Virus record (IMG/VR): IMGVR_UViG_3300013233_000093 | Span: 62,001-126,000 of that record | Reading direction: 5' to 3' (one strand) | Length of the DNA stretch: 64,000 bases | Shown: positions 1 through 59,854 of the stretch, piece after piece | Layout of the letters: every line of letters starts with the position of its first letter | Numbering within the stretch: position 1 is the first letter of the stretch | Notes under the pieces: generated by a model | The model's input: only the letters and a program-made list of their open reading frames with translations | Database searches by the model: none | What the model was told of the DNA's origin: nothing | Program-made: the position numbers and the translations under genes

Positions 1-52
1 AAATGAGGAACAATCGTTTGATTCTGGTTATGACCCGGACTATGAACTGTGA
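1..52 (+). CDS. 3' end of an upstream gene (…NEEQSFDSGYDPDYEL*), truncated by the window edge
   Basis: Open frame from position 2 ends at TGA 50-52, overlapping the GTG start of the next ORF (GTGA coupling). Confidence 0.5.
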   Translation, partial: NEEQSFDSGYDPDYEL

Positions 53-2149: not shown

Positions 2150-2184
2150 GTCTATACAGTACCGCACTGCGGTACTGTATAGAC
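2150..2184. terminator. Perfect 17-bp inverted repeat followed by TTATGTC and a T-rich tract
   Basis: gtctatacagtaccgca-c-tgcggtactgtatagac. Confidence 0.75.
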
Positions 2185-2198
2185 TTATGTCTTCTTTT

Positions 2199-2318
2199 CT
2201 CTATTTCTGTGTTCGTCGTAATTATCGGTCTATATTACTTTAGTGATACTTAGGTAATAATACTTAGGTGCACTGTTATAACTAATAGATCTCTAATATG
2301 AGATCAAAGGATTTAAAG
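2199..2318 (+). repeat. Type-A cassette leader, copy 1 (TATATTAC early-promoter core at 2231-2238, two leader hairpins, SD)
   Basis: Near-identical to 36423-36542 and 59423-59537; TATATTAC matches the phiKZ early promoter motif. Confidence 0.9.
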
Positions 2319-2576
2319 ATGAAACTGATTAAAGAATTCTCGTTTGGCGATAAATTTTGCTATAACCACGAGACCGGCTCTGTCGAAGTCCTCGACTTCG
2401 ACAACGAGGTGCTGGCTGAGGTTAAGTTCCCAGCAGATCCATTGATAACCACCATCGAGGTGGTGTCCCCGGGCACGCGGATCATTAAGGGGGTCATTCA
2501 CAGCGATCCATACTGGCTGTGCGTACCAAACCCAGGCGAAAACGCCGGGGAGGGGATATACGAGCTACCGACATAG
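2319..2576 (+). CDS. Small early protein, MKL(I/V)K…IYE family (85 aa)
   Basis: AAAGGA SD before ATG 2319; same start context as the paralogous cassettes. Confidence 0.8.
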   Translation: MKLIKEFSFGDKFCYNHETGSVEVLDFDNEVLAEVKFPADPLITTIEVVSPGTRIIKGVIHSDPYWLCVPNPGENAGEGIYELPT

Positions 2577-2587
2577 CTCGTATATCC

Positions 2588-2620
2588 CCTCCCCCTTCGG
2601 GGGAGGTTTTCTTTTTTTTT
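2588..2620 (+). terminator. Intrinsic terminator of cassette 1
   Basis: cctccccc-ttc-gggggagg followed by a long T tract; near-identical in cassettes 2 and 3. Confidence 0.85.
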
Positions 2621-2664
2621 TCAGTCCATGAGGTATTGCATGTACTAGACAGGAGTGATAAGAA

Positions 2665-4854
2665 ATGAATGTAAATCCGTTTATAAGAGAAGCCAAAGAG
2701 TATGTACGCACGCTGGACATCGTCGGTGAATACGTAAAAAACCAAACCACGTACATCTCCACGGTTACAGGAGATGCACCAGAGAAAGTAGAGTCTTTCG
2801 TAAAGGAACACATCGAACCTAAGTCCCCCATGATGCGTGTGTTGAAAAAGATACCTGGAGGCGATCGCGTAAAGGCCACTCAAGATCTTACTTCGTTCTT
2901 AAGTGAGGCAGATCACACAGGACGTTTTGTAAGCCCCAGTCTCGTGATGTATGAAAACCCTAAAAAGGAAGTCAGCTTCATCTCAAAGTTTGCACAGCAA
3001 GGCATGGATGCTCGTGACATACTTAAGGATAAAATGAAAGACGCTCGTGCTAACAAGGATAAAGAAAAGACCACGTTCTATCATAATGCACAGTGGTCTA
3101 AAAAGATCCTGAATAACATCATCTCCGGTGCAGGATCGTCGCCTTATAATCCCATCTACAATGCCAGTACACACACCACGTTGACATCCACGTGTCGTTG
3201 TGCTACTTCTTATTCCAACGCCACATGTGAGAAGTTCCTGGCGGGTAATCGTCATTACTACAATGAAGAGATTACTTTGTCAGACATGGCGGGACTTATT
3301 CGTATTACTGATTTAGTAAAGCTGGAGGCAGCTATGACTAAATACAAGTTGGATTATCCCACTCCAGAGTTCTTATATGGACACATTGTAAGATCTGTAC
3401 GTAAGTATTGGCGTAGAGCGGATGACAATTACGCAACTGTAAAAGAGTTCATCTTTGCGATGTCTCCTATTCAGAGAGCGGCAGTGGCATTTGTGAGTGA
3501 CTTGGAAGCACTATACCAAGTAAACCCTAAGTTCGTAGCTACAATGTTTAACACCATGTCTACGCCCACGACACACGAAGTCAAAGATCCTGACAAGTAT
3601 GTAAAGGCAATGAACGAAGAGATGGTAAGTCACGTAGGCTTGGTAATGAAACGCGTAGTAAACCATCGTAGGATCTTTAAGTTCAAACAAGAAGATCCTA
3701 AAGGGTACGCGCAATACGCAGGTTTTGCCGAGCACATGTTTAAAGCCTTGGATTACTACGGAGACTTTATACGTGCCACGCTGGTGACCGACTCATTGCC
3801 ATCGGGTATATATGCGTATCTGTTTTCGTTGCGTGATGTAGTGGTGGTGTCTGATACCGATTCCACGATCTTCACTACGGACGACTGGGTACAGCGTTTA
3901 GGTGACGGTTCTTCCTTTAGTGACCTAGGCGTATCCGTAGGCGCCACAGCTACGTTCTTGTTCTCATCTCATTTAGCACATAACCTGGCGCTGTTATCCA
4001 GACACTTAGGTGTACAAGATGATAAACTCTTTATGCTTACTATGAAAGGTGAGTTTTATCAGCCTGTGTTGGGCGTGACCAGTATGACCAAGCATTACTT
4101 CTCTTACACAGGAGCTTGTGAAGGCGATGTCTACGAGAAGTACGCGTTTGACGTCAAGGGTGTAAATCTTAAGAACTCTACACATCCTAAGGAGCTAACT
4201 GAGGGCAATGCTGCGTATATTAGACTGCTGATGGATGCAGTAGTGGAAGAACGCAAACTGAGTATGCTGGAGATCATGGAACTACCCATGCTAGCCGCTA
4301 ATAAGGTACGCCAGTCGCTGCTTGCGGGAGAAACGAAATATCTAACAGGACGTGAGGTAAAGCCCGCCACCGCGTACAAGAATCCAGACTCGTCCGTCTT
4401 TATACAGAAGAAGCTCTGGGATACCGTGTACGGCAAGGAACTTGGTCTAGCCGATACACCTCCTTATCGTGTGGTAAAGGTACCGCTGGTATTTGGACCT
4501 AGTAAAGCTAAGTTCGAATCGTGGCTACTTACACTACCCGATGAAAAGCAAGAGTTGTTCCGCAAGGCGTTGTCGCAAGCAGGCAAGACCTCCCTTACTT
4601 CGATATACCCACCACATGCAGTGGTAAACGGAGTGGGTGTGCCAAAAGAGTTGGTGTCTGTAATGGATATTGGTAAGTATGAATGCGAACTCATGACGGG
4701 CTATCTATCCGTGCTAGAGACCATTGGCATATTCATACGCAATAACAAGAATACACGTCTGTTGTCACAGGAGTTAAACTGGCAGACGTTTGTGGATAAC
4801 GGCAGTAAGCAATGGAACTTCATGGATCCTAAATTACAACTAGAGGCGGTGTAA
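2665..4854 (+). CDS. Split family-B DNA polymerase, subunit carrying motifs B and C (phiKZ gp50-like)
   Basis: KKILNNIISG (motif B-like), VVSDTDSTIF (motif C), TKHY and KGV; no exonuclease or motif A in this ORF. Confidence 0.88.
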   Translation: MNVNPFIREAKEYVRTLDIVGEYVKNQTTYISTVTGDAPEKVESFVKEHIEPKSPMMRVLKKIPGGDRVKATQDLTSFLSEADHTGRFVSPSLVMYENPKKEVSFISKFAQQGMDARDILKDKMKDARANKDKEKTTFYHNAQWSKKILNNIISGAGSSPYNPIYNASTHTTLTSTCRCATSYSNATCEKFLAGNRHYYNEEITLSDMAGLIRITDLVKLEAAMTKYKLDYPTPEFLYGHIVRSVRKYWRRADDNYATVKEFIFAMSPIQRAAVAFVSDLEALYQVNPKFVATMFNTMSTPTTHEVKDPDKYVKAMNEEMVSHVGLVMKRVVNHRRIFKFKQEDPKGYAQYAGFAEHMFKALDYYGDFIRATLVTDSLPSGIYAYLFSLRDVVVVSDTDSTIFTTDDWVQRLGDGSSFSDLGVSVGATATFLFSSHLAHNLALLSRHLGVQDDKLFMLTMKGEFYQPVLGVTSMTKHYFSYTGACEGDVYEKYAFDVKGVNLKNSTHPKELTEGNAAYIRLLMDAVVEERKLSMLEIMELPMLAANKVRQSLLAGETKYLTGREVKPATAYKNPDSSVFIQKKLWDTVYGKELGLADTPPYRVVKVPLVFGPSKAKFESWLLTLPDEKQELFRKALSQAGKTSLTSIYPPHAVVNGVGVPKELVSVMDIGKYECELMTGYLSVLETIGIFIRNNKNTRLLSQELNWQTFVDNGSKQWNFMDPKLQLEAV

Positions 4855-4860
4855 CTAAAT

Positions 4861-4908
4861 CACATACAGATCAGCTCCGTAAGGAGCTGATCTTATGTCG
4901 TATATTAC
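4861..4908 (+). repeat. 48-bp hairpin-TATG element upstream of head paralogue, copy 1
   Basis: cacatacagatcagctccgtaaggagctgatcttatgtcgtatattac; also at 6559-6606 and 29434-29481. Confidence 0.9.
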
Positions 4909-4925
4909 ATTTAGAGGATAGTAAG

Positions 4926-6527
4926 ATGGATAGTCGTGTGGTGGGTGAGTTGGAGTATGCTGAGTTGGTGTTGGATGGGGTGCTTAGTGGTCGTGTTATT
5001 AAGATCTATGAGGAGTCTGATAGTATTGCCGGTATGCTTTGCCTAGACAAAGACCGTGTGAAGTGGGTGTCTGGCGATAGCATCGCTGCAGACACTGTAG
5101 CAGGCATGCAGTTTATAGGACGTGCTTTTAAGGCTGTGTGGCGGCTCATAGTCCGTGCAGTCATGGCGGTAGTAAGTGGTCTTAAAAGACTCTGGGAGTG
5201 GCTTACCGGAGGCAAGGGCAGTACTAACCCTGATACTCCTGGTGCTACTTATCAGGATACACCTACTCCAGTAGGAGGTAAGATAGGTAAGCAAATGGCT
5301 CGTGAGGATAAGGCCGTCGTAGAGACTGCACTCATCGTAGCAGAGCTAGAAGAGAAGGGCGTAGATATAGAAAAGGCAGTAAGCGAAGTCACTCCTGAGA
5401 TGTTAGAAGCAGCACATCGCGAGAATAATACTCGGGACGAAGCACGGATATCTAAAATAGAGAAGGACGCGGAGGACGCTGAGGAGTTCAACAAGCGTGA
5501 GCGCGAAAGGTTAGACGGCATCACATCAAGGTTTAACGCAACCGCCAAGCAAGAAGCCGCTAATAAAAAGGAAGCCGAACGCATCGCAGCAGCAGATAAG
5601 GAGGTGAGGGAACGCGCAGCAGCAAGGGACGATGCAAGGATTAACGTATTGCGTAAACAACGCAGCGGGTTCACTCGTATAAAGATCACCAATGCCATAC
5701 GCGCCGCATACGCAGAAGAAGTTGGAAAAATCGAGAATAACGCAATCTTAACTTCCGGCGGCATAGACAAAGATAAAATGCGAAGAGCTGTGTATAAGGC
5801 GGCGTCAGGAAGCCAAAACATAAGCCGTATAGATCTAGCTGACTTGCGTTTTAATATTAAAGAAGTCGCTACAAACGGGCCGTCTACCGAGCGGACAAAG
5901 AGGGATGTTGGAGATGCATATAAACGCCTTATTGCTAAAGTTGTACTGCGTACAACCGAGAACGTGTACGAGATTTTTAATATGCCGGAGGGCTACGCGA
6001 GCGCGTTAATCGACGGCATGGTTGATGGCGTGGATGAAGATGAACTGGGCGGTGCGTTAGTATCACCCGACACCGGCGGGGGTAGAGTATTTACACTGAC
6101 CATGGGACGTACGGGCAAGCACACACCGAAGTTTACACTAGCCGTCACCTCACCCAGTACTCCGCCTACGTTGGAACACCTCGACATACCAGGCTTTAGC
6201 GCGGTCAGTGAGGAAATGCAGGAATATCACGAACATGTTTCCAAAACGTCTAAGGCATTCGAGCCGGCGCAAAAGCAAATCCTCGCTAAAATAAAGAAAG
6301 CGCTTAGAGTGCTGGACGAAGAAGCTTCTGCGTACAAGGATCATCCAGACGTGGAAAACATCCACTCCGTTATAGAATCCATAGGAAACGAGTATGCAAA
6401 CGTAACCAAGGCATTAAAGTTTGTAACGCATATCCTGAACGGTTACCAAGATGCGTACACATCCAGAGCCACATTGGCTAGGGAAATCGTGGGATTAGTA
6501 ATAAATAGCCCATCCCGGGAGAAGTAA
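4926..6527 (+). CDS. Inner-head/inner-body paralogue family protein with conserved leader (533 aa)
   Basis: Propeptide ending TVAGMQ, then amphipathic FIGRAFKAVWRLIV…LWEWLTGG helix as in the phiKZ gp93-type family; paralogous to 6622 and 29497. Confidence 0.7.
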   Translation: MDSRVVGELEYAELVLDGVLSGRVIKIYEESDSIAGMLCLDKDRVKWVSGDSIAADTVAGMQFIGRAFKAVWRLIVRAVMAVVSGLKRLWEWLTGGKGSTNPDTPGATYQDTPTPVGGKIGKQMAREDKAVVETALIVAELEEKGVDIEKAVSEVTPEMLEAAHRENNTRDEARISKIEKDAEDAEEFNKRERERLDGITSRFNATAKQEAANKKEAERIAAADKEVRERAAARDDARINVLRKQRSGFTRIKITNAIRAAYAEEVGKIENNAILTSGGIDKDKMRRAVYKAASGSQNISRIDLADLRFNIKEVATNGPSTERTKRDVGDAYKRLIAKVVLRTTENVYEIFNMPEGYASALIDGMVDGVDEDELGGALVSPDTGGGRVFTLTMGRTGKHTPKFTLAVTSPSTPPTLEHLDIPGFSAVSEEMQEYHEHVSKTSKAFEPAQKQILAKIKKALRVLDEEASAYKDHPDVENIHSVIESIGNEYANVTKALKFVTHILNGYQDAYTSRATLAREIVGLVINSPSREK

Positions 6528-6558
6528 CGCGAATGTACGTGGCTTCGCTTAACTAAAT

Positions 6559-6606
6559 CACATACAGATCAGCTCCTTAAGGAGCTGATTTTATGTCGTA
6601 TATTAC
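6559..6606 (+). repeat. 48-bp hairpin-TATG element, copy 2
   Basis: Two mismatches relative to copy 1. Confidence 0.9.
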
Positions 6607-6621
6607 TTAGAGGACAACAAG

Positions 6622-8121
6622 ATGGATGTGTATGGTGAGTTGGAGTATGCTGAGTTGGTGTTGGATGGTGTGTTGAGTGGTAGGGTGAGTCAGATCTATG
6701 AGGAGTCTGATACTATTGCTGGTATGATGGGTATGTGTGGTGATAGAGTGGAGTGGGTGTCTGGCGACTCCATAGGCGCAGACACTGTAGCAGGCATGCA
6801 GTTTATAGGTAAGGCAATCGGGGCAGTTTGGAACTTGATCTGGAACGCCATTAGCGCAGTGCTGATAGCTATAGCTAAATTATTCATTTGGTTGTTTACA
6901 GGCGGCAGTCCTGGTAAATCGGGTATAGCGGGCACGATCTATGAAAAGAAGATCACGCCCGCAGGTGGCTGGTTTGGCAAGCGGCAGGTGAAAGAAGATT
7001 ACCATGCGTTACGCATGCGACGACTAGCCGAGCACTCAGTGGCCGTAAATAACCTTACAGCAAGTCTTATTGAACCGGGTAATGCGATAAAGAAGGAACT
7101 CGCTTCTGCGAATGAACTGATTAAACAGCTAGACAAGATTAAGAAAGATCAAGATGCTGACAATAAGACGCTTGACAAGATGACCGACGATATGAAAGCC
7201 TTGCTTAAAGCCCAGGCCGACGAAAAGAAAGATATAGTTTCAGGCAAGACGGTAGCTGTTAACACACCCGCGAAGTCTGATTTCTCAGCCACCATTAAGG
7301 TTACCGATGAGTTGCGCGAAGCGTTCAAGTCGGATTTCGAATACTTGGATAAACATGCAGTGGCCAATAAGGGCACTGTAAGACCAGAAGAAAACCGCAA
7401 GGTAATGCATGACCTCACAGGATTTTCAAAGAAGGCACTGACTGCCGCAGGGGCATTAAAGGACATTCCAAAAGACTTTGACCGCATTATAAAATCCATC
7501 GAGGCTAAGAAATTCGAGAGTGCCGGTAAAGATCAAAAGGCGTTGGTTGATAAGGTGTCTTCTGTGTCAACTGGCATTGCTAACGCAGTCGGACTTGACC
7601 TCGATAATGCAGGTGAGATAGCCCGGTACGCGGATAAACGTGGGGGTTTGTCAAGCACAGATCTAGGTGGCGGCAAGTTTGTGCGGGTGTCTAGCGAAGA
7701 AATAAAAGCCATTCCCGGTCTTTATACATTCAGCGTTAGTGTCATAGAACCCAAAGACATCATCAAAGTAAAACAGCTGATAATCGAAAAGGGCGACTTT
7801 GACGAAGATGTAATAAGCAAGCGTCATCAAGATATGGCGAAGGATTTAAAGATCCACGCAGATGGCTTTGAAGCAGTTAAAAAGCTCGTTAAGGAAACTA
7901 ACGATAAGCTGACCGCTTACACAAAGGGCATGGAAAAAGACGGAGACGTTCCGCTTAGCCCTCTTTTACGTGCAGTCGGTAATAACGTCAAGGAGTACGT
8001 TAACACATACCCTAAGTTATCCAAGGTACTTACTCAGATAACGACGGCAATGCAGCACGATGGAAACATTAAACTTGGTTTACTGTCCGCCATAGCGGCA
8101 GATGGTAAGAAGGATAAATAA
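6622..8121 (+). CDS. Inner-head paralogue family protein (499 aa)
   Basis: GELEYAELVLDGVLSGRV…DTVAGMQFIG leader shared with 4926 and 29497. Confidence 0.7.
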   Translation: MDVYGELEYAELVLDGVLSGRVSQIYEESDTIAGMMGMCGDRVEWVSGDSIGADTVAGMQFIGKAIGAVWNLIWNAISAVLIAIAKLFIWLFTGGSPGKSGIAGTIYEKKITPAGGWFGKRQVKEDYHALRMRRLAEHSVAVNNLTASLIEPGNAIKKELASANELIKQLDKIKKDQDADNKTLDKMTDDMKALLKAQADEKKDIVSGKTVAVNTPAKSDFSATIKVTDELREAFKSDFEYLDKHAVANKGTVRPEENRKVMHDLTGFSKKALTAAGALKDIPKDFDRIIKSIEAKKFESAGKDQKALVDKVSSVSTGIANAVGLDLDNAGEIARYADKRGGLSSTDLGGGKFVRVSSEEIKAIPGLYTFSVSVIEPKDIIKVKQLIIEKGDFDEDVISKRHQDMAKDLKIHADGFEAVKKLVKETNDKLTAYTKGMEKDGDVPLSPLLRAVGNNVKEYVNTYPKLSKVLTQITTAMQHDGNIKLGLLSAIAADGKKDK

Positions 8122-8123
8122 AG

Positions 8124-8157
8124 GCATAAGACAGGTCCGGCTGGACCTGTCTTATGC
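8124..8157. terminator. 15-bp GCATA…TATGC hairpin between convergent genes
   Basis: gcataagacaggtcc-ggct-ggacctgtcttatgc. Confidence 0.75.
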
Positions 8158-8164
8158 TGTACAT

Positions 8165-9253
8165 TCATTTTACAGATTCACCTAGTAACGTAATAATCTC
8201 TTCAGCTTCTTCCCGTAAGACATCGCTGGGTAGCTTATCTATCGTACGCAACATACGAATGCGTCTGCGGATCCTACGATACTGATTATACAACAAGTTA
8301 GGACTGGTAAAGAATACCGTCAGGAAGTAAAGGCTGATGTGCAATCGCAAATGCGCAATGAACAAGACCGTGTAATTAGCCACCGATTCTCGTATTTTCA
8401 TCTGTGGATGATTCACATACAGACTCACTCCAGGCACAGAACTTGGCAAGTTATTAAGCAGTCCCATGCCGCTGATGTCCTTTATAGATAAGTCGTCTAC
8501 AAGTTTACGCATCTTGACAAAGACTTCTTTGTTTCGATTTACACTCACGTACAAAGGACGTTGATTGATCGTCGGTATAGACACACCACCGTTCATTTCT
8601 ATTAACACGTTTTTGTACACACTGTCGATCTGGCTTAAGCTCATGCCGGGTAATACATACCTTCCTATAAACTCGTTAAGAGTCTCACGTTCAAGCTCTG
8701 GTTTCTTATTGTTACGCTTAGACCAGTAGTAATGCATTACTGCAAACGCAGTCACGGACAAACCAATCACAGAGTACCTATCATTAGATGTCTTTCCGTT
8801 ACCGTGAGGTATGTGCCATGGATTAAGTATGTATGGCTGTGTTACCACTGTGCACGGAGCCATGTCCATCCAGTTATCTTCATTGATGTCCAGCGAGTCC
8901 ATGTAACTGAAGCTGTCTAGGCGTAATAGATAATCGTAACTGTCGTCGTAAAAGACACCCTTCAATGGAGCCGCCAACATTATTGGCGTGGTGCCACCTA
9001 TTTGAGTAGCTAACGTATCTTCCAATGATCGTACGCGCTCATAAACTTCAGTGGCGTTATTAAGCGTGTACGTCTTAGGCAGCAGATGCACCAGTCGTAG
9101 TAAAGGATGATTCGAGCGAACCGGCTTACCGTACATAGCCGCATAAACACGCATGCCTTCCATGTCTTCGTATTGTAGATCTATTAGTCTGTCTAGGTTA
9201 AAATCGCTTTTGTGTACCGAGTCCACAGGTACAGTAGAGAATAGGTTTTGCAT
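8165..9253 (-). CDS. Conserved protein divergently transcribed from chimallin (phiKZ gp52-like position)
   Basis: ORF 8165..9391; ATG at 9253 (MQNLF) is the likelier start; VRSNHPLLRL motif; synteny. Confidence 0.65.
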   Translation of the reverse strand: MQNLFSTVPVDSVHKSDFNLDRLIDLQYEDMEGMRVYAAMYGKPVRSNHPLLRLVHLLPKTYTLNNATEVYERVRSLEDTLATQIGGTTPIMLAAPLKGVFYDDSYDYLLRLDSFSYMDSLDINEDNWMDMAPCTVVTQPYILNPWHIPHGNGKTSNDRYSVIGLSVTAFAVMHYYWSKRNNKKPELERETLNEFIGRYVLPGMSLSQIDSVYKNVLIEMNGGVSIPTINQRPLYVSVNRNKEVFVKMRKLVDDLSIKDISGMGLLNNLPSSVPGVSLYVNHPQMKIRESVANYTVLFIAHLRLHISLYFLTVFFTSPNLLYNQYRRIRRRIRMLRTIDKLPSDVLREEAEEIITLLGESVK

Positions 9254-9395
9254 GGTAAGTTCCAGGGGTAAGTTCGGCGTCATAGAATCGCATAAAAGTT
9301 TAGAACGTGTGCTATAGTTATGTATAACAACGAATGCGCAAGCGTTCGTCAGTACCAGCGTATATTTAACGGACGTAAAAATACGTTTCACCGTT

Positions 9396-9421
9396 TATTC
9401 AAAACTATATCACTATTATGA
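9396..9421 (+). promoter_or_regulatory. Type-B early promoter TATTCAAAACTATATCACTATTATGA upstream of chimallin
   Basis: Exact 26-mer repeated five times in the window, always upstream of a gene start; contains a TATAT(C/T)AC core. Confidence 0.8.
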
Positions 9422-9496
9422 TACACAGCTTGTGTGTCATACGAAGTGTTATACTCGAGTTAACACTTATCACTTACGAAGAAAGGAAGTAAAAAG

Positions 9497-11398
9497 ATGG
9501 CGATTGTAAACAACAAAAGCAAAACCGCAGCCCCTACCGCCCCTGCACAGCAAGCTCCTGCGGACCATGCCGCACCAACACAGCCAGCTCAGGCACCCGT
9601 TACCCCTGGTGATTTATTCGGATTCACAGTGCCAACCCAGTCAGGTGGATATAACGTAGAAGATCTAGCTAAGTTTGTCAAGGCGATTAAAGAAACTGCT
9701 GCAGCTGCGACTGCAAACAAAACCGGCAACTTTAAAATTGTCGTTGCCAACAGCAGCGAACTGCTATTACCCATCGTTTGTGTGGTCAACTTGACACCAC
9801 AACCCGTGGTATACGCGCTGCTGATCGAGGGTCTTATGTCCACCAAGCTTACTCCCCGTAAGCGGAGTGTCTTCAATCCCGCCGTAGGCGGTCAAGTCGA
9901 ATTGACAATCGACATGTTCTCGGGTCGTTGCTGGGACGAGACCGGCCAGAAAGCTGCGCGACGTGCCGTTGCTAACGACCTCAATGTGGCAGAAGGCGAT
10001 GTGAGTCTGCGCCATCACATGACCGTTCCCGGTTCAGTCGAATGGGCTACCGAGTCCATGGCACAGTTGTGCTTTGAACTTGCCATGTTCCCACTCTTCG
10101 ATAAGGCGCGTGACGAGTCACGCCGTTTGAACCATGCAGCGTTGACCAATTCAGCAGGCAGCTTGGTGATGACTGCGCGTTATACCCAGGGTTCTGGTAC
10201 TGAGTTAAACGTCGTTGGGGAGCGCATTGCGTGTGATGTGATTGTGTCCACCTCCTTAGAACGTAAGAAGGTTAACAACGCAACAACCAAAGCCACCGAT
10301 GCACATCGTGTAGCAGAATCTTTCGCAGTAGCGAATACCAAGATCTTGGCAGATTTCTTGCCACTGGCCAAAGATCCAATGCAGCATGGCATCGCGTCCC
10401 CGGGCGCACAGGCCAAGCCTGGGTTTGTTCCGCAGCTCATCATCACTGATTTCGATGGTGCAAGTGAGGGTGGCGCTTCTATGGATCTGCGTACACTGGT
10501 GATGGCGTTCTTGAACGTCATGCCATTGGCATCCAATTACGGTTGGGTTAACCTGTACGCAGGACACAATAACAAGAAGTCTTCCCTGGCACAACTGGGC
10601 CTGTTGCACGATCCTTGGGCAGAAAGCCGTGGTAAGGCAGAGTTGGGACTGATTGACATTGACCACACACCCTTCGGAAATCAAGCTGAAGGAAAGCTTA
10701 CAAACATGCAAGTAGCTCAAAGCTGGTGCACCAAGGGAGTTATGGTCGGTATTGATATTGACCAGGCACGTCCGAATGCATGGGTAGGTGACGTTGTCAC
10801 CATGATCGGTAACGGTAACGTGAAAGCAAACATTGCGTTTGCTAATGCGTGCGATGCCTTGACTCAAGGTGCCTACTCCCGCATTGCTTCACAAAGCAAC
10901 GGTGGCAAACTGCCGATGGCGTTCATGCAAGAGCAAACCGGGCTGTTGACCGCCACGTACACCGGCACTGACGGTGAACTGGCGGATAGTCGCCGTAGTA
11001 CACTGACCACGCTCATCGAATCCTTTGGTGGAGATCAAGCGGTAATCACACCTTTCATTAAAGGCCGGTTGCCTGGCGCTACAGAGTTTGATCATGAAGA
11101 CATGCGTAGAGCATGGATTGATGCCACCCCTGGGTTCGAAGTCAATGGCGTTGGCATGCGCACCTTTGCAACACCTGCGTTCTTGAGCAACCTGACACAG
11201 GCATTCATCGAAGCAGGTGTACGTATTGTTCCTGATGCGTCTTTCTGCTTCACTGAAGGCGGCACGGTTGGTGTCACTGGCAACTACGGTGAAGTGTTGA
11301 ATGTCAATGGCATGTATGCACAGAACCAAGCCAGCGGCGCAGGCTTTGGTAACCACTTTGGGGTAATGCCCACCTTTACACCAGCAGTCTACTACTAA
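9497..11398 (+). CDS. chmA: Chimallin, phage nuclear shell protein (phiKZ gp54-like)
   Basis: 633 aa; MAI… start with Ala/Pro/Gln-rich disordered N-tail, FVPQLIIT motif, Gly/aromatic C-tail; strong SD; directly upstream of the nvRNAP beta' N-terminal gene. Confidence 0.85.
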   Translation: MAIVNNKSKTAAPTAPAQQAPADHAAPTQPAQAPVTPGDLFGFTVPTQSGGYNVEDLAKFVKAIKETAAAATANKTGNFKIVVANSSELLLPIVCVVNLTPQPVVYALLIEGLMSTKLTPRKRSVFNPAVGGQVELTIDMFSGRCWDETGQKAARRAVANDLNVAEGDVSLRHHMTVPGSVEWATESMAQLCFELAMFPLFDKARDESRRLNHAALTNSAGSLVMTARYTQGSGTELNVVGERIACDVIVSTSLERKKVNNATTKATDAHRVAESFAVANTKILADFLPLAKDPMQHGIASPGAQAKPGFVPQLIITDFDGASEGGASMDLRTLVMAFLNVMPLASNYGWVNLYAGHNNKKSSLAQLGLLHDPWAESRGKAELGLIDIDHTPFGNQAEGKLTNMQVAQSWCTKGVMVGIDIDQARPNAWVGDVVTMIGNGNVKANIAFANACDALTQGAYSRIASQSNGGKLPMAFMQEQTGLLTATYTGTDGELADSRRSTLTTLIESFGGDQAVITPFIKGRLPGATEFDHEDMRRAWIDATPGFEVNGVGMRTFATPAFLSNLTQAFIEAGVRIVPDASFCFTEGGTVGVTGNYGEVLNVNGMYAQNQASGAGFGNHFGVMPTFTPAVYY

Positions 11399-29433: not shown

Positions 29434-29481
29434 CACATACAGATCAGCTCCTTAAGGAGCTGATCTTATGTCGTATATTAC
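29434..29481 (+). repeat. 48-bp hairpin-TATG element, copy 3
   Basis: One mismatch relative to copy 1 (4861). Confidence 0.9.
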
Positions 29482-36388: not shown

Positions 36389-36422
36389 ATATAGACTATC
36401 CCGTAGTGGGATAGTCTATATG
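36389..36422. terminator. 14-bp hairpin ending in TATG
   Basis: atatagactatccc-gtagt-gggatagtctatat. Confidence 0.7.
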
Positions 36423-36542
36423 CTCTATTTCTGTGTTCGTCGTAATTATCGGTCTATATTACTTTAGTGATACTTAGGTAATAATACTTAGGTACGTTGT
36501 TCTAAACTATTAGATCTCTTATTAGAGATCAAAGGATTTAAA
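36423..36542 (+). repeat. Type-A cassette leader, copy 2 (TATATTAC at 36455-36462)
   Basis: First ~70 nt identical to copy 1. Confidence 0.9.
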
Positions 36543-36782
36543 ATGAAATTAGTAAAAGAGTTCGAAAATGTCACACATGTGATTTTCAGTGGTACCGATC
36601 TCTTTGTCATGATGTGCGACGGCGAGGAAGACACCAGTGGTAATCTTCCACTTCCCACTGGTGTCTGCGAGCGGTTCACACTGTCAAGCCATGGCATGAC
36701 AGTCGAGTTTTCAGGCTCTAAATACGAATACATCGCCGAAACCGACGAGGAGTCGGGATGGGTAGGGATCTACGAGAAGTAG
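36543..36782 (+). CDS. Small early protein, MKL(I/V)K…IYE family (79 aa)
   Basis: MKLVKEF…WVGIYEK; AAAGGA SD. Confidence 0.8.
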   Translation: MKLVKEFENVTHVIFSGTDLFVMMCDGEEDTSGNLPLPTGVCERFTLSSHGMTVEFSGSKYEYIAETDEESGWVGIYEK

Positions 36783-36788
36783 ATCCCG

Positions 36789-36821
36789 CCTCCCCTTCGG
36801 GGGAGGTTTTCTTTTTTCTTT
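36789..36821 (+). terminator. Intrinsic terminator of cassette 2
   Basis: cctcccc-ttcg-ggggagg followed by a T tract. Confidence 0.85.
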
Positions 36822-36837
36822 ATTAGGACTCGATAGA

Positions 36838-56479: not shown

Positions 56480-56529
56480 GCGCACATCACACATGGCAGT
56501 GGCCATGTGTGATGTGTCTTTTCTTTTTT
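56474..56529 (+). terminator. GCATA-hairpin with T tract
   Basis: cacatcacacatggc-agtg-gccatgtgtgatgtg followed by tcttttctttttt. Confidence 0.75.
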
Positions 56530-59422: not shown

Positions 59423-59537
59423 TATTTCTGTGTTCGCCGTAAATATCGGTATATATTACTTTAGTGATACTTAGGTAATAATACTTAGGTACACTGTTCT
59501 AACTTAATAGATCTCTAAGAGATCAAAGGATTTAAAG
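59423..59537 (+). repeat. Type-A cassette leader, copy 3 (TATATTAC at 59452-59459)
   Basis: Few mismatches relative to copies 1 and 2. Confidence 0.9.
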
Positions 59538-59807
59538 ATGAAATTAGTAAAAATGATCGAAGCATGTACTTCTGTCCTGCATGTAGAATTTGATACCGTG
59601 TTTGACGTGATCCGTATTGAACGGAATGGTGTTCCGTGTGGTGTCTTCGAATTGGGGTTTACCCCCAACGTTAACGGCGTCGGTAACCGGCTTAACCTCG
59701 CCGACGGGGTTAAAACACAATACATCGCCAACCCCCACGGCGATGCTTCCGTCCTTGTCATGGACACCCCAACCGGGGTATTCATCTACGAGATCCCCTG
59801 CGAATAG
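59538..59807 (+). CDS. Small early protein, MKL(I/V)K…IYE family (89 aa)
   Basis: MKLVKMIE…TGVFIYEIPCE. Confidence 0.8.
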   Translation: MKLVKMIEACTSVLHVEFDTVFDVIRIERNGVPCGVFELGFTPNVNGVGNRLNLADGVKTQYIANPHGDASVLVMDTPTGVFIYEIPCE

Positions 59808-59817
59808 GGGATCTCGG

Positions 59818-59854
59818 CCTCCCCTTATCGGGGGAGGTTTTCTTTTTTCTTTTT
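59818..59854 (+). terminator. Intrinsic terminator of cassette 3
   Basis: cctcccc-ttatcg-ggggagg followed by a T tract. Confidence 0.85.

What the first reader, a model, noticed from the sequence alone, without database searches (positions are those of the whole stretch)
2547..2606. Stop codon buried in a covarying hairpin that overlaps the terminator (attenuator-like)
Seen: in all three cassettes the UAG lies at the loop/3'-arm of a perfect stem whose sequence differs but whose pairing is kept. Copy 1 is 21 bp (GGGGAGGGGATATACGAGCTA 2547-2567 / TAGCTCGTATATCCCCTCCCC 2574-2594). Copy 2 is GGGATCTAC/GTAGATCCC (36765-36787), extendable with bulges into the terminator arm. Copy 3 is CGAGATCCCCT/AGGGGATCTCG (59789-59816). 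In copy 1 the 3' arm includes most of the terminator's 5' arm (2588-2595), so the full stem and terminator compete; in copy 3 they only abut. Inference: either a 3'-end protection structure, or a ribosome-sensing switch (ribosome at the stop lets the terminator form; untranslated RNA reads through into DNA polymerase). The latter would matter in a phage that separates transcription from translation.
Basis: partly seen in the sequence, partly recalled or inferred. Interest (0 to 1): 0.72.

Follow-up and report, generated by a model that had tools for sequence, protein, structure and literature searches.

The report
Stop-codon hairpin beside a phage terminator
Three related small early genes of an uncultured phiKZ-like giant phage each end in a perfect RNA hairpin that covers the stop codon and sits against a phiKZ-type terminator; only the first copy's hairpin hides the terminator, so this looks like a compound 3' end with one probably leaky terminator, not a shared ribosome-sensing switch.

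Summary
All three hairpins are perfect and lie at the stated coordinates, with UAG at the loop/3'-arm junction. Elsewhere in the 223-kb genome this almost never happens.

- **Host genome:** a singleton phiKZ-like phage with a phiKZ-type capsid protein, a nuclear-shell homologue and TATATTAC early promoters.
- **Terminator:** the hairpin matches the conserved phiKZ terminator hairpin CCYCCCC/GGGRRGG. It occurs only in these three cassettes (PMC10914365).
- **Copy 1:** folding shows the terminator masked in naked RNA (helix probability 0.07). A ribosome in the last 12 codons or on the stop would restore it.
- **Copies 2 and 3:** both hairpins form side by side (terminator 0.99). A ribosome on the stop would occlude the terminator in copy 2.
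- **Conclusion on the switch:** there is no common ribosome logic, and transcription in such phages is separated from ribosomes.

Best reading: a compound 3'-end structure kept by selection on pairing. Copy 1 is probably leaky into the DNA polymerase gene.

No relatives or transcript data exist, so function is inferred. None of 60 phiKZ terminators has this arrangement. I rate it a modestly interesting new variant of a known kind.

The parts
2231..2238 (+). Copy 1: phiKZ-type early promoter core TATATTAC. It is followed by TTTAGTG, as in the 201phi2-1 consensus.
   Evidence: consensus from PMC7058600 Table 2
2247..2305 (+). Copy 1: conserved 5' leader with two small hairpins. These are 2247-2270 (10 bp, including two G.U pairs) and 2288-2305 (GATCTC/GAGATC). 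The AAAGGA ribosome-binding site follows.
   Evidence: the module occurs 7 times in the genome
2319..2576 (+). Copy 1 ORF, 85 aa, MKLIKEF...GIYELPT, stop UAG at 2574-2576.
2547..2594 (+). Copy 1 stop-spanning hairpin: 21-bp perfect stem with a 6-nt loop. Its base (2547-2553 / 2588-2594) sequesters the terminator's 5' arm.
2588..2621 (+). Copy 1 phiKZ-type terminator hairpin CCTCCCCC/GGGGGAGG (2588-2606) plus T-tract (2607-2621). It is predicted to be masked in naked RNA.
2665..4854 (+). Divergent family B DNA polymerase gene, directly downstream of copy 1. No early-promoter motif lies in between.
36455..36462 (+). Copy 2 early promoter core TATATTAC.
36543..36782 (+). Copy 2 ORF, 79 aa, MKLVKEF...GIYEK, stop UAG at 36780-36782.
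36765..36787 (+). Copy 2 stop-spanning hairpin: 9-bp perfect stem with a 5-nt loop.
36789..36822 (+). Copy 2 terminator CCTCCCC-UUCG-GGGGAGG plus T-tract. It abuts the hairpin, with a 1-nt gap.
59452..59459 (+). Copy 3 early promoter core TATATTAC.
59538..59807 (+). Copy 3 ORF, 89 aa, MKLVKMI...FIYEIPCE, stop UAG at 59805-59807.
59789..59816 (+). Copy 3 stop-spanning hairpin: 11-bp perfect stem (12 bp with a closing G.U pair) and a 6-nt loop.
59818..59854 (+). Copy 3 terminator CCTCCCC-UUAUCG-GGGGAGG plus T-tract. It abuts the hairpin, with a 1-nt gap.

Best explanation
**What it is.** Each of three paralogous early-gene cassettes ends in a compound 3' structure.
- The cassette layout is: phiKZ-type early promoter, structured leader, a 79-89-codon ORF, then a phiKZ-type terminator.
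- The compound structure is a perfect stem-loop built from the last codons (the conserved G-I-Y-E region) and the short spacer after the stop. This stem-loop lies directly against the conserved CCUCCCC/GGGGAGG terminator hairpin and its U-tract.

**Shown.**
- The pairing is kept although the sequences differ.
- The stop-to-terminator distance (9-14 nt) is the ordinary one for this terminator type.
- Terminators in this genome and in phiKZ crowd the stop codon. This is the known signature of transcription that ribosomes do not follow.

**Inferred.**
- The extra hairpin acts on the RNA as part of the 3' end, as a second barrier to 3' exonucleases and/or a tandem ('V-shaped') terminator.
- It can swallow the stop codon because no ribosome interferes with co-transcriptional folding in a nucleus-forming phage.
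- In copy 1 the stem has grown by 6 bp at the top and, at the base, by the 6 pairs 2547-2552/2589-2594 that take in the terminator's 5' arm. In naked RNA the terminator is therefore masked.
- Copy 1's early transcript then probably reads through into the DNA polymerase gene, which has no early promoter of its own.
- Copies 2 and 3 keep a fully formed terminator. Copy 2 is followed by a gene with its own early promoter, and copy 3 by a small ORF and then the capsid gene.
For: - **Geometry:** hairpins and stop positions are exact.
- **Family:** there are only three members in the genome, about 25% identical in protein, with near-identical flanks.
- **Compensatory change:** A:T to C:G between copies 1 and 2, read directly from the sequences. 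Copy 3 has a re-made hairpin in another register.
- **Rarity:** a stop inside a hairpin is rare elsewhere. The counts are 53 of 58 upstream and 0 of 24 strict terminators.
- **Terminator identity:** CCYCCCC-loop-GGGRRGG occurs only at the three cassettes against 0 expected. It matches the phiKZ motif (PMC10914365).
- **Spacing:** the stop lies 14, 9 and 13 nt before the terminator arm here, against a mode of 11-13 nt in 42 phiKZ terminators.
- **Folding:** terminator probability is 0.07 in copy 1 and 0.99 in copies 2 and 3. The 21-bp stem is 5.2 kcal/mol more stable than the stem-plus-terminator state. Growing-transcript folds never show the terminator.
- **Promoters:** early-promoter identity rests. 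No such motif, and no recurrent motif, lies between copy 1 and the polymerase gene. One lies after copy 2.
- **Phage type:** a nuclear-shell homologue is present.
- **Stop-proximal terminators:** the median gap is 9.5 nt and 12 of 24 lie within a ribosome footprint. This is a published proxy for uncoupled transcription (PMC7858274).
- **Precedent:** conditional termination with short and read-through transcripts is documented in phiKZ (PMC10914365). Elongated compound terminator hairpins are documented in 201phi2-1 (PMC11512511).
Against: - There are no transcript data. Thermodynamic folds do not show what the phage RNA polymerases do.
- There are only three copies and no relatives, so selection on structure cannot be tested statistically.
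- Holding the upstream hairpin open does not change terminator formation in copies 2 and 3. A role in termination itself therefore has no computational support there, and the stability role is pure inference.
- Perfect Watson-Crick stems without G.U pairs fit a DNA-level palindrome equally well. The G.U versus A.C test was not discriminating.
- Short promoters for the non-virion polymerase cannot be excluded upstream of the polymerase gene. phiKZ also has terminator-like hairpins just upstream of its polymerase gene.
- The correlation between masking and the downstream gene rests on one case.
Confidence: 0.5

Rival explanations
1. **Ribosome-sensing attenuator.** A ribosome finishing the small ORF melts the long stem and lets the terminator form. 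Untranslated RNA reads through into the DNA polymerase gene.
For: For copy 1 the logic works in silico. Terminator probability is 0.07 in naked RNA and 0.72-0.99 with a ribosome footprint on the stop. It is 0.79-0.99 with the ribosome anywhere in the last 12 codons. The layout resembles the trp leader, with the stop codon at the loop of the first hairpin and a terminator directly after it.
Against: - Copies 2 and 3 have no competing structure (terminator 0.99). A ribosome on the stop abolishes the terminator in copy 2 (0.00-0.52) and weakens it in copy 3. The family therefore shares no such logic.
- The ORFs are 79-89 codons long, with no regulatory codon run.
- The promoter is the virion-polymerase early type, and the phage has a nuclear-shell homologue. 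In these phages transcription is physically separated from ribosomes (PMC12908238; 10.1101/2023.09.20.558163).
Confidence: 0.07
2. **Double-strand RNA processing site.** The 21-bp stem of copy 1, and the coaxially stacked 17-21 bp of hairpin plus terminator in copies 2 and 3, are cut by RNase III or a phage nuclease. The cut would separate the small cistron from downstream RNA or trigger decay, as in retroregulation at lambda sib or T7 processing sites.
For: The stem of copy 1 is 21 perfect bp, about the length of two helical turns that RNase III prefers (own knowledge). It sits between two cistrons that would be co-transcribed if the terminator is masked.
Against: Copies 2 and 3 have only 9 and 11-12 bp in one helix. 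There are no internal loops or known processing-site features. No Rfam family matches. The host and its RNases are unknown.
Confidence: 0.1
3. **DNA-level palindrome without an RNA function of its own.** Inverted repeats next to the C-rich/G-rich terminator are made and perfected by template switching during replication (quasi-palindrome correction), or serve as a DNA site. The buried stop codon is a by-product.
For: - All stems are perfect Watson-Crick with no G.U pairs.
- Copy 1's base simply repeats the terminator's 3' arm, GGGGAGG.
- Copy 3 looks like a 6-nt deletion that removed the old stop, followed by a newly made complementary arm (sequences).
- Copies 1 and 2 also carry other perfect or near-perfect inverted repeats inside the ORF.
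- The G.U versus A.C asymmetry test shows no RNA-strand signal (13 against 8).
Against: - A perfect hairpin stands at the same place in all three copies although the ORFs are only about 25% identical. That argues for maintenance rather than accident.
- None of 60 phiKZ terminators of the same type has such a neighbour, so the terminator sequence does not generate one by itself.
- The arm sequences differ, so a sequence-specific DNA-binding site is unlikely.
Confidence: 0.2

Closest known systems
Conserved intrinsic terminator of phiKZ and 201phi2-1 (BCCYCCCCHWWDGGGRRGGBYTTATKYYGT; PMC10914365, PMC11512511)
   Same: - The cassette terminator has the same C-rich/G-rich hairpin, CCTCCCC-UUCG-GGGGAGG.
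- It has the same short distance from the stop codon.
- In 201phi2-1 a second motif can elongate the hairpin, and conditional termination with short and read-through transcripts is documented.
   Different: - Here a plain U-tract replaces the TTATKYYGT tail. That tail occurs in this genome behind other, variable hairpins.
- None of 60 phiKZ terminators has a stop inside the terminator hairpin or inside an abutting upstream hairpin. Only one has any abutting perfect hairpin, an AT-only 7-bp stem.
Ribosome-mediated transcription attenuators (trp leader type)
   Same: Copy 1 has a terminator whose 5' arm can pair with an upstream segment instead. The stop codon sits at the first hairpin's loop. 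A ribosome position decides in silico which structure forms.
   Different: - The ORF is full-length, with 79-89 codons and no regulatory codons.
- The alternative pairing exists in one of three copies only.
- The polarity is reversed, since naked RNA reads through.
- The phage probably transcribes away from ribosomes.
V-shaped / tandem-hairpin terminators (WebGeSTer classification, PMC3013805)
   Same: Two hairpins, the second starting immediately after the first, with the second followed by a U-trail. This fits copies 2 and 3.
   Different: That class is defined downstream of the stop. Here the first hairpin is half coding and contains the stop. In copy 1 the two hairpins are mutually exclusive.
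PeSL promoter-terminator cassettes of T4-like phages (PMC2839356, PMC4122927)
   Same: Small ORFs of unknown function are flanked by near-identical early-promoter and stem-loop modules repeated around the genome. The same flanks also enclose a non-homologous ORF (genome 34719-35081).
   Different: No evidence of shuffling could be obtained, because there are no close relatives. The promoter type and the polymerase differ.

Membership tests
Ribosome-mediated transcription attenuator | Intrinsic terminator (hairpin plus U-tract) at the end of the leader | tested here: met
   all three copies
Ribosome-mediated transcription attenuator | Mutually exclusive alternative pairing that takes the terminator's 5' arm | tested here: not met
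   Present in copy 1 only (terminator probability 0.07). Copies 2 and 3 give 0.99, and their alternative pairings are not competitive.
Ribosome-mediated transcription attenuator | Ribosome position on the ORF selects the structure in the same sense in all members | tested here: not met
   A ribosome on the stop turns the terminator on in copy 1, off in copy 2 and slightly off in copy 3.
Ribosome-mediated transcription attenuator | Transcription and translation coupled in one compartment | not testable with these tools
   The indirect evidence is against it: a phiKZ-type early promoter, a nuclear-shell homologue, and stop-proximal terminators (PMC7858274).
phiKZ-type conserved terminator | Hairpin CCYCCCC - short loop - GGGRRGG | tested here: met
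   Three matches on the + strand, all in the cassettes, against 0 expected in shuffles
phiKZ-type conserved terminator | Tail TTATKYYGT after the hairpin | tested here: not met
   The tail here is TTTTCTTTTTT. The TTATKYYGT tail follows 8 other hairpins in this genome.
phiKZ-type conserved terminator | Experimentally mapped transcript 3' end | not testable with these tools
   The only RNA run of the sample is tiny, and nothing from it could be laid on the stretch.
V-shaped tandem terminator | [quoted passage not shown] | tested here: met
   Copies 2 and 3 have a 1-nt gap and both helices sit in the minimum-energy fold. In copy 1 the helices overlap.
PeSL-like mobile regulatory cassette | Repeated composite promoter / stem-loop modules flanking small variable ORFs | tested here: met
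   The 5' module occurs 7 times, and the terminator module 3 times plus 1 variant. The ORFs are about 25% identical or unrelated.
PeSL-like mobile regulatory cassette | Insertions, deletions or replacements bounded by the modules between related genomes | not testable with these tools
   No related genome was found.
Integron attC site | Imperfect hairpin with conserved R''/R' core sites (RYYYAAC / GTTRRRY) and extrahelical bases | tested here: not met
   The stems are perfect and contain no GTTRRRY or RYYYAAC (sequences).
RNase III processing hairpin | About 20 bp or more of double-stranded RNA | tested here: inconclusive
   Copy 1 has 21 bp. Copies 2 and 3 have 9 and 11-12 bp in a single helix. 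Cleavage cannot be tested.

The most novel reading that the evidence does not exclude
Copy 1 is a genuine conditional terminator that gates early expression of the DNA polymerase gene. The 21-bp stem keeps the phiKZ-type terminator off while the RNA is made in a ribosome-free compartment. A ribosome, or a phage RNA-binding factor that opens the stem, switches it on. If the genome is transcribed while exposed to the cytoplasm, this would work as a compartment or timing sensor.
Probability: 0.08. Interest if true: 0.75.

Novelty: new variant of a known kind. Interest (0 to 1): 0.35.

Why it matters
Conditional termination is seen in phiKZ-like phages, where promoter-proximal terminators give short transcripts and read-through transcripts. 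No cis mechanism is known for it. Copy 1 offers a concrete, testable one: a self-complementary extension that hides a conserved terminator just upstream of the DNA polymerase gene.

The family also illustrates a wider point. In a phage that transcribes away from ribosomes, RNA structure may freely invade the end of a coding sequence.

The value is limited. It rests on one uncultured genome, three copies and no expression data.

Tried and rejected
**Searches for relatives, all negative.**
- GenBank phages by DNA. The capsid protein's best match there is under 30% identical.
- IMG/VR by promoter-leader motif, capsid protein and polymerase.
- The 5.8-billion-protein index with the family profile and the capsid protein.
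- An exhaustive profile search of 1.8 billion representatives. It found only the three own proteins plus a 2902-aa Ig-repeat adhesin that shares the ...GTFIYEL... strand motif.
- A metagenome scan for the leader repeat. It found two unrelated contigs.

**Reads.** The one DNA run that holds the phage has only about 3x word depth where it is covered, and no contig over the hairpin. Nothing from the RNA run could be laid on the stretch.

**Other negative or uninformative tests.**
- Rfam: no family in the window.
- AlphaFold on the three-sequence alignment gave an all-beta model at pLDDT 54. That is too poor for a fold search.
- The 'insulator' idea held that the upstream hairpin protects the terminator from G-rich codons. 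It is not supported: the terminator stays at 0.99 when the hairpin's 3' arm is held single-stranded.
- A trp-like 2:3 antiterminator in copy 3 (the 82% complementary pairing found) is only weakly competitive, with a minimum terminator probability of 0.57.
- The G.U versus A.C asymmetry test for RNA-level selection was not discriminating.
- The recurrent-motif search upstream of the polymerase gene gave only chance matches.
- GATC in the stems of copies 2 and 3 is not significant, since GATC is not depleted in the genome (observed/expected 0.93).
- Another genetic code is not indicated. TAG is an ordinary stop here, ending about 22% of long ORFs.
- Integron attC was rejected because it needs core sites and extrahelical bases, which are absent.

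Full report
**Source.** The window is bases 62001-126000 of a 222,906-bp viral record with terminal repeats.
- It encodes a phiKZ-type major capsid protein, a divergent family B DNA polymerase and RNA-polymerase-like pieces.
- It also encodes a 633-aa protein (9497-11398) that matches proteins annotated as nuclear shell protein in Vibrio and Klebsiella jumbo phages (E 7e-13). Its match to the Pfam chimallin family is below the cut-off.
- No tubulin was found. Some nucleus-forming phages lack it (PMC11724907).
- The phage is a singleton. The capsid protein's best public match is about 30% identical, and no search found a close relative.
- The sample is a microbial mat.

**Observation.** The three hairpins are exactly as described.
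- They are perfect stems of 21, 9 and 11 bp, at 2547-2594, 36765-36787 and 59789-59816.
- Each holds the UAG of a small ORF at the junction of loop and 3' arm.
- Each is followed at once by a terminator-like hairpin and T-tract.
- RNA folds reproduce them.
- Chance is excluded. A shuffled genome yields 2 perfect stems of 9 bp or more in 223 kb, against 72 observed.
- The genome is full of long perfect hairpins at gene ends, but in those the stop lies upstream of the hairpin. That holds for 53 of 58, and no strict hairpin-plus-T-tract terminator has the stop inside (0 of 24). The three cassettes account for three of the five exceptions.

**The cassettes.** Each copy begins with TATATTAC followed by TTTAGTG.
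- This is the phiKZ / 201phi2-1 early-promoter consensus (PMC7058600 Table 2). TATAT[TC]AC occurs 43 times on the + strand and 10 times on the - strand, mostly within a longer conserved promoter block.
- A leader follows that is identical over about 85 nt in seven places of the genome. It folds into two small hairpins, one with two G.U pairs.
- Only three of the seven carry the MKLVKEF...IYE protein family. The proteins are about 25% identical.
- Profile searches of 1.8 billion proteins find no relatives. The exception is an Ig-repeat adhesin that shares the C-terminal ...GTFIYEL... strand. This suggests the I-Y-E codons are held by the protein.
- A fourth cassette (genome 34719-35081) has the same leader and a variant of the same terminator around an unrelated ORF. 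Its UAG sits in the terminator loop and it has no extra hairpin.

**The terminator.** Its hairpin, CCTCCCC-loop-GGGGAGG, matches the hairpin of the conserved phiKZ terminator motif (PMC10914365).
- In this genome it occurs only in the three cassettes.
- The stop lies 14, 9 and 13 nt before the terminator arm. In phiKZ itself the same distance clusters at 11-13 nt. The stop-to-terminator spacing is therefore ordinary.
- What is unusual is that this short spacer pairs with the last codons.
- Among 60 phiKZ terminators none has a stop inside the terminator hairpin or inside an abutting hairpin. The arrangement is thus not a general property of this terminator type.

**How the three stems relate.** This is read from the sequences.
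- Copies 1 and 2 share the core GGGAT[A/C]TAC / GTA[T/G]ATCCC. The Ile wobble change is matched by the complementary change in the non-coding arm.
- Copy 1 adds 6 bp at the top (GAGCTA/TAGCTC). It lacks the 1-2-nt spacer before the terminator. Its upstream Gly/Glu codons read GGGGAG, which pairs with CTCCCC of the terminator arm.
- Copy 3 looks like copy 2 without the six bases AAGTAG. The ORF runs through the former 3' arm to a new UAG, and a new complementary arm follows.
- Pairing is therefore re-created, not merely inherited. This points to maintenance, but with three copies it cannot be tested statistically.

**Does the hairpin compete with the terminator?**
- In copy 1 the 21-bp stem (-43.2 kcal/mol) beats the best stem-plus-terminator state (-38.0).
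- In a 107-nt context the terminator helix has probability 0.07. Folds of the growing transcript never show it.
- In copies 2 and 3 both helices form together, with the terminator at 0.99.
- I modelled a ribosome as an unpaired footprint from -15 to +11..15 around the A-site codon. On the stop, or anywhere in the last 12 codons, it restores the terminator in copy 1 (0.72-0.99). On the stop it occludes the terminator in copy 2 (0.00-0.52) and affects copy 3 slightly.

**Biological setting.** The promoter is the early, virion-polymerase type, and the phage has a shell-protein homologue.
- In Chimalliviridae the early vesicle and the nucleus separate transcription from ribosomes (PMC12908238; bioRxiv 10.1101/2023.09.20.558163).
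- Consistent with this, terminators in this genome start a median 9.5 nt after the stop, and half lie within a terminating ribosome's footprint. This is a published proxy for uncoupled transcription (PMC7858274).
- In that setting structure may invade the ORF end without cost, and copy 1 stays in its naked-RNA state, with the terminator masked.
- Downstream of copy 1 lies the DNA polymerase gene, with no early-promoter motif and no recurrent motif in the 58-nt spacer.
- Copy 2 is followed by a gene with its own early promoter. Copy 3 is followed by a small ORF and the capsid gene.
- This fits a leaky terminator where read-through is useful and tight ones elsewhere. It is one case only, and short non-virion-polymerase promoters cannot be excluded.
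- phiKZ also has terminator-like hairpins just before its polymerase gene.
- Conditional termination with short and read-through transcripts is documented in phiKZ. Elongated compound terminator hairpins are documented in 201phi2-1.

**What the hairpin does in copies 2 and 3 is not shown.**
- It is not needed for terminator folding.
- A role as a second barrier to 3' exonucleases, or as the first half of a V-shaped terminator (PMC3013805), is inference.
- A DNA-level origin by template switching is a serious rival. All stems are perfect Watson-Crick, and the strand-asymmetry test gave nothing.

**Verdict.** I file it as a new variant of known kinds, namely a phiKZ-type terminator, tandem hairpins and an antiterminator-like pairing. 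Interest is moderate to low, and everything functional still needs experiments.

Noticed in passing
window 2246-2270, 36470-36494, 59467-59491; L009:4400-4640; L010:2000-2240: The conserved leader holds two copies of a 14-bp unit, ATACTTAGGTAATA. On the RNA they can pair as a 10-bp hairpin with two G.U pairs. The same unit stands 7-8 times in tandem in two unrelated metagenome contigs, which suggests a protein-binding repeat.
   Followed up: partly
window 9406, 36848, 56555, 62778, 63501 and about 25 more in the genome: A strongly conserved promoter block, TTCAAAACTATATCACTATTATGAT, is nearly always followed at once by a small 5' hairpin (for example GACAAC...GTTGTC). It precedes the nuclear-shell homologue among other genes. 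Early mRNAs seem to start with a stem-loop.
   Followed up: partly
window 4868-4908, 6568-6606, 29441-29481; genome 201004-201029 (- strand): A composite hairpin-promoter module, AGATCAGCTCC-loop-GGAGCTGATCT followed by TATGTCGTATATTAC, is repeated four times. At three of the four copies the downstream ORF visibly begins MD...GELEYAELV; the fourth (window 29441) was not read. The layout resembles PeSL.
   Followed up: no
whole genome; e.g. window 2150-2184, 36389-36421, 56483-56516: The genome holds 72 perfect hairpins with stems of 9-21 bp, against 2 in a shuffle. Most sit right after stop codons. Eight are followed by TTATKYYGT, the tail of the phiKZ terminator motif, although their stems are variable.
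   Followed up: partly
window 2381-2403 and 36629-36666: The ORFs of copies 1 and 2 each contain a further strong inverted repeat inside the coding sequence (10 bp perfect; 15 nt at 93%). The ORF bodies fold better than shuffles (z -2.6, -3.6 and -1.8 for the three copies).
   Followed up: partly
genome 34719-35094 (L007:320-695), outside the window: A fourth cassette has the same leader and a variant of the same terminator (TCTCCCC/GGGGAGG) around an unrelated 120-aa ORF. Its UAG lies in the terminator loop.
   Followed up: yes
genome 175.6-176.5 kb and 183.1-183.5 kb, outside the window: Two clusters of many perfect hairpins (8-13 bp) lie within a few hundred bases, not at gene ends.
   Followed up: no
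window 2229-2317 (run X1): The metagenome run that holds the phage also has contigs with the leader module joined to sequence absent from this genome. Related phages with the same module therefore live in the same mat.
   Followed up: partly
window 2665-11398: The gene order, DNA polymerase then a few ORFs then the nuclear-shell homologue, matches phiKZ (PHIKZ050 to PHIKZ054), despite protein identities of about 20-30%.
   Followed up: no
window 2319-2576, 36543-36782, 59538-59807: The C-terminal half of the cassette proteins resembles the last strands of the Ig-like repeats of a 2902-aa adhesin-like protein (P0006, E 1e-10 summed over 8 repeats). AlphaFold gives an all-beta model of low confidence.
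   Followed up: partly
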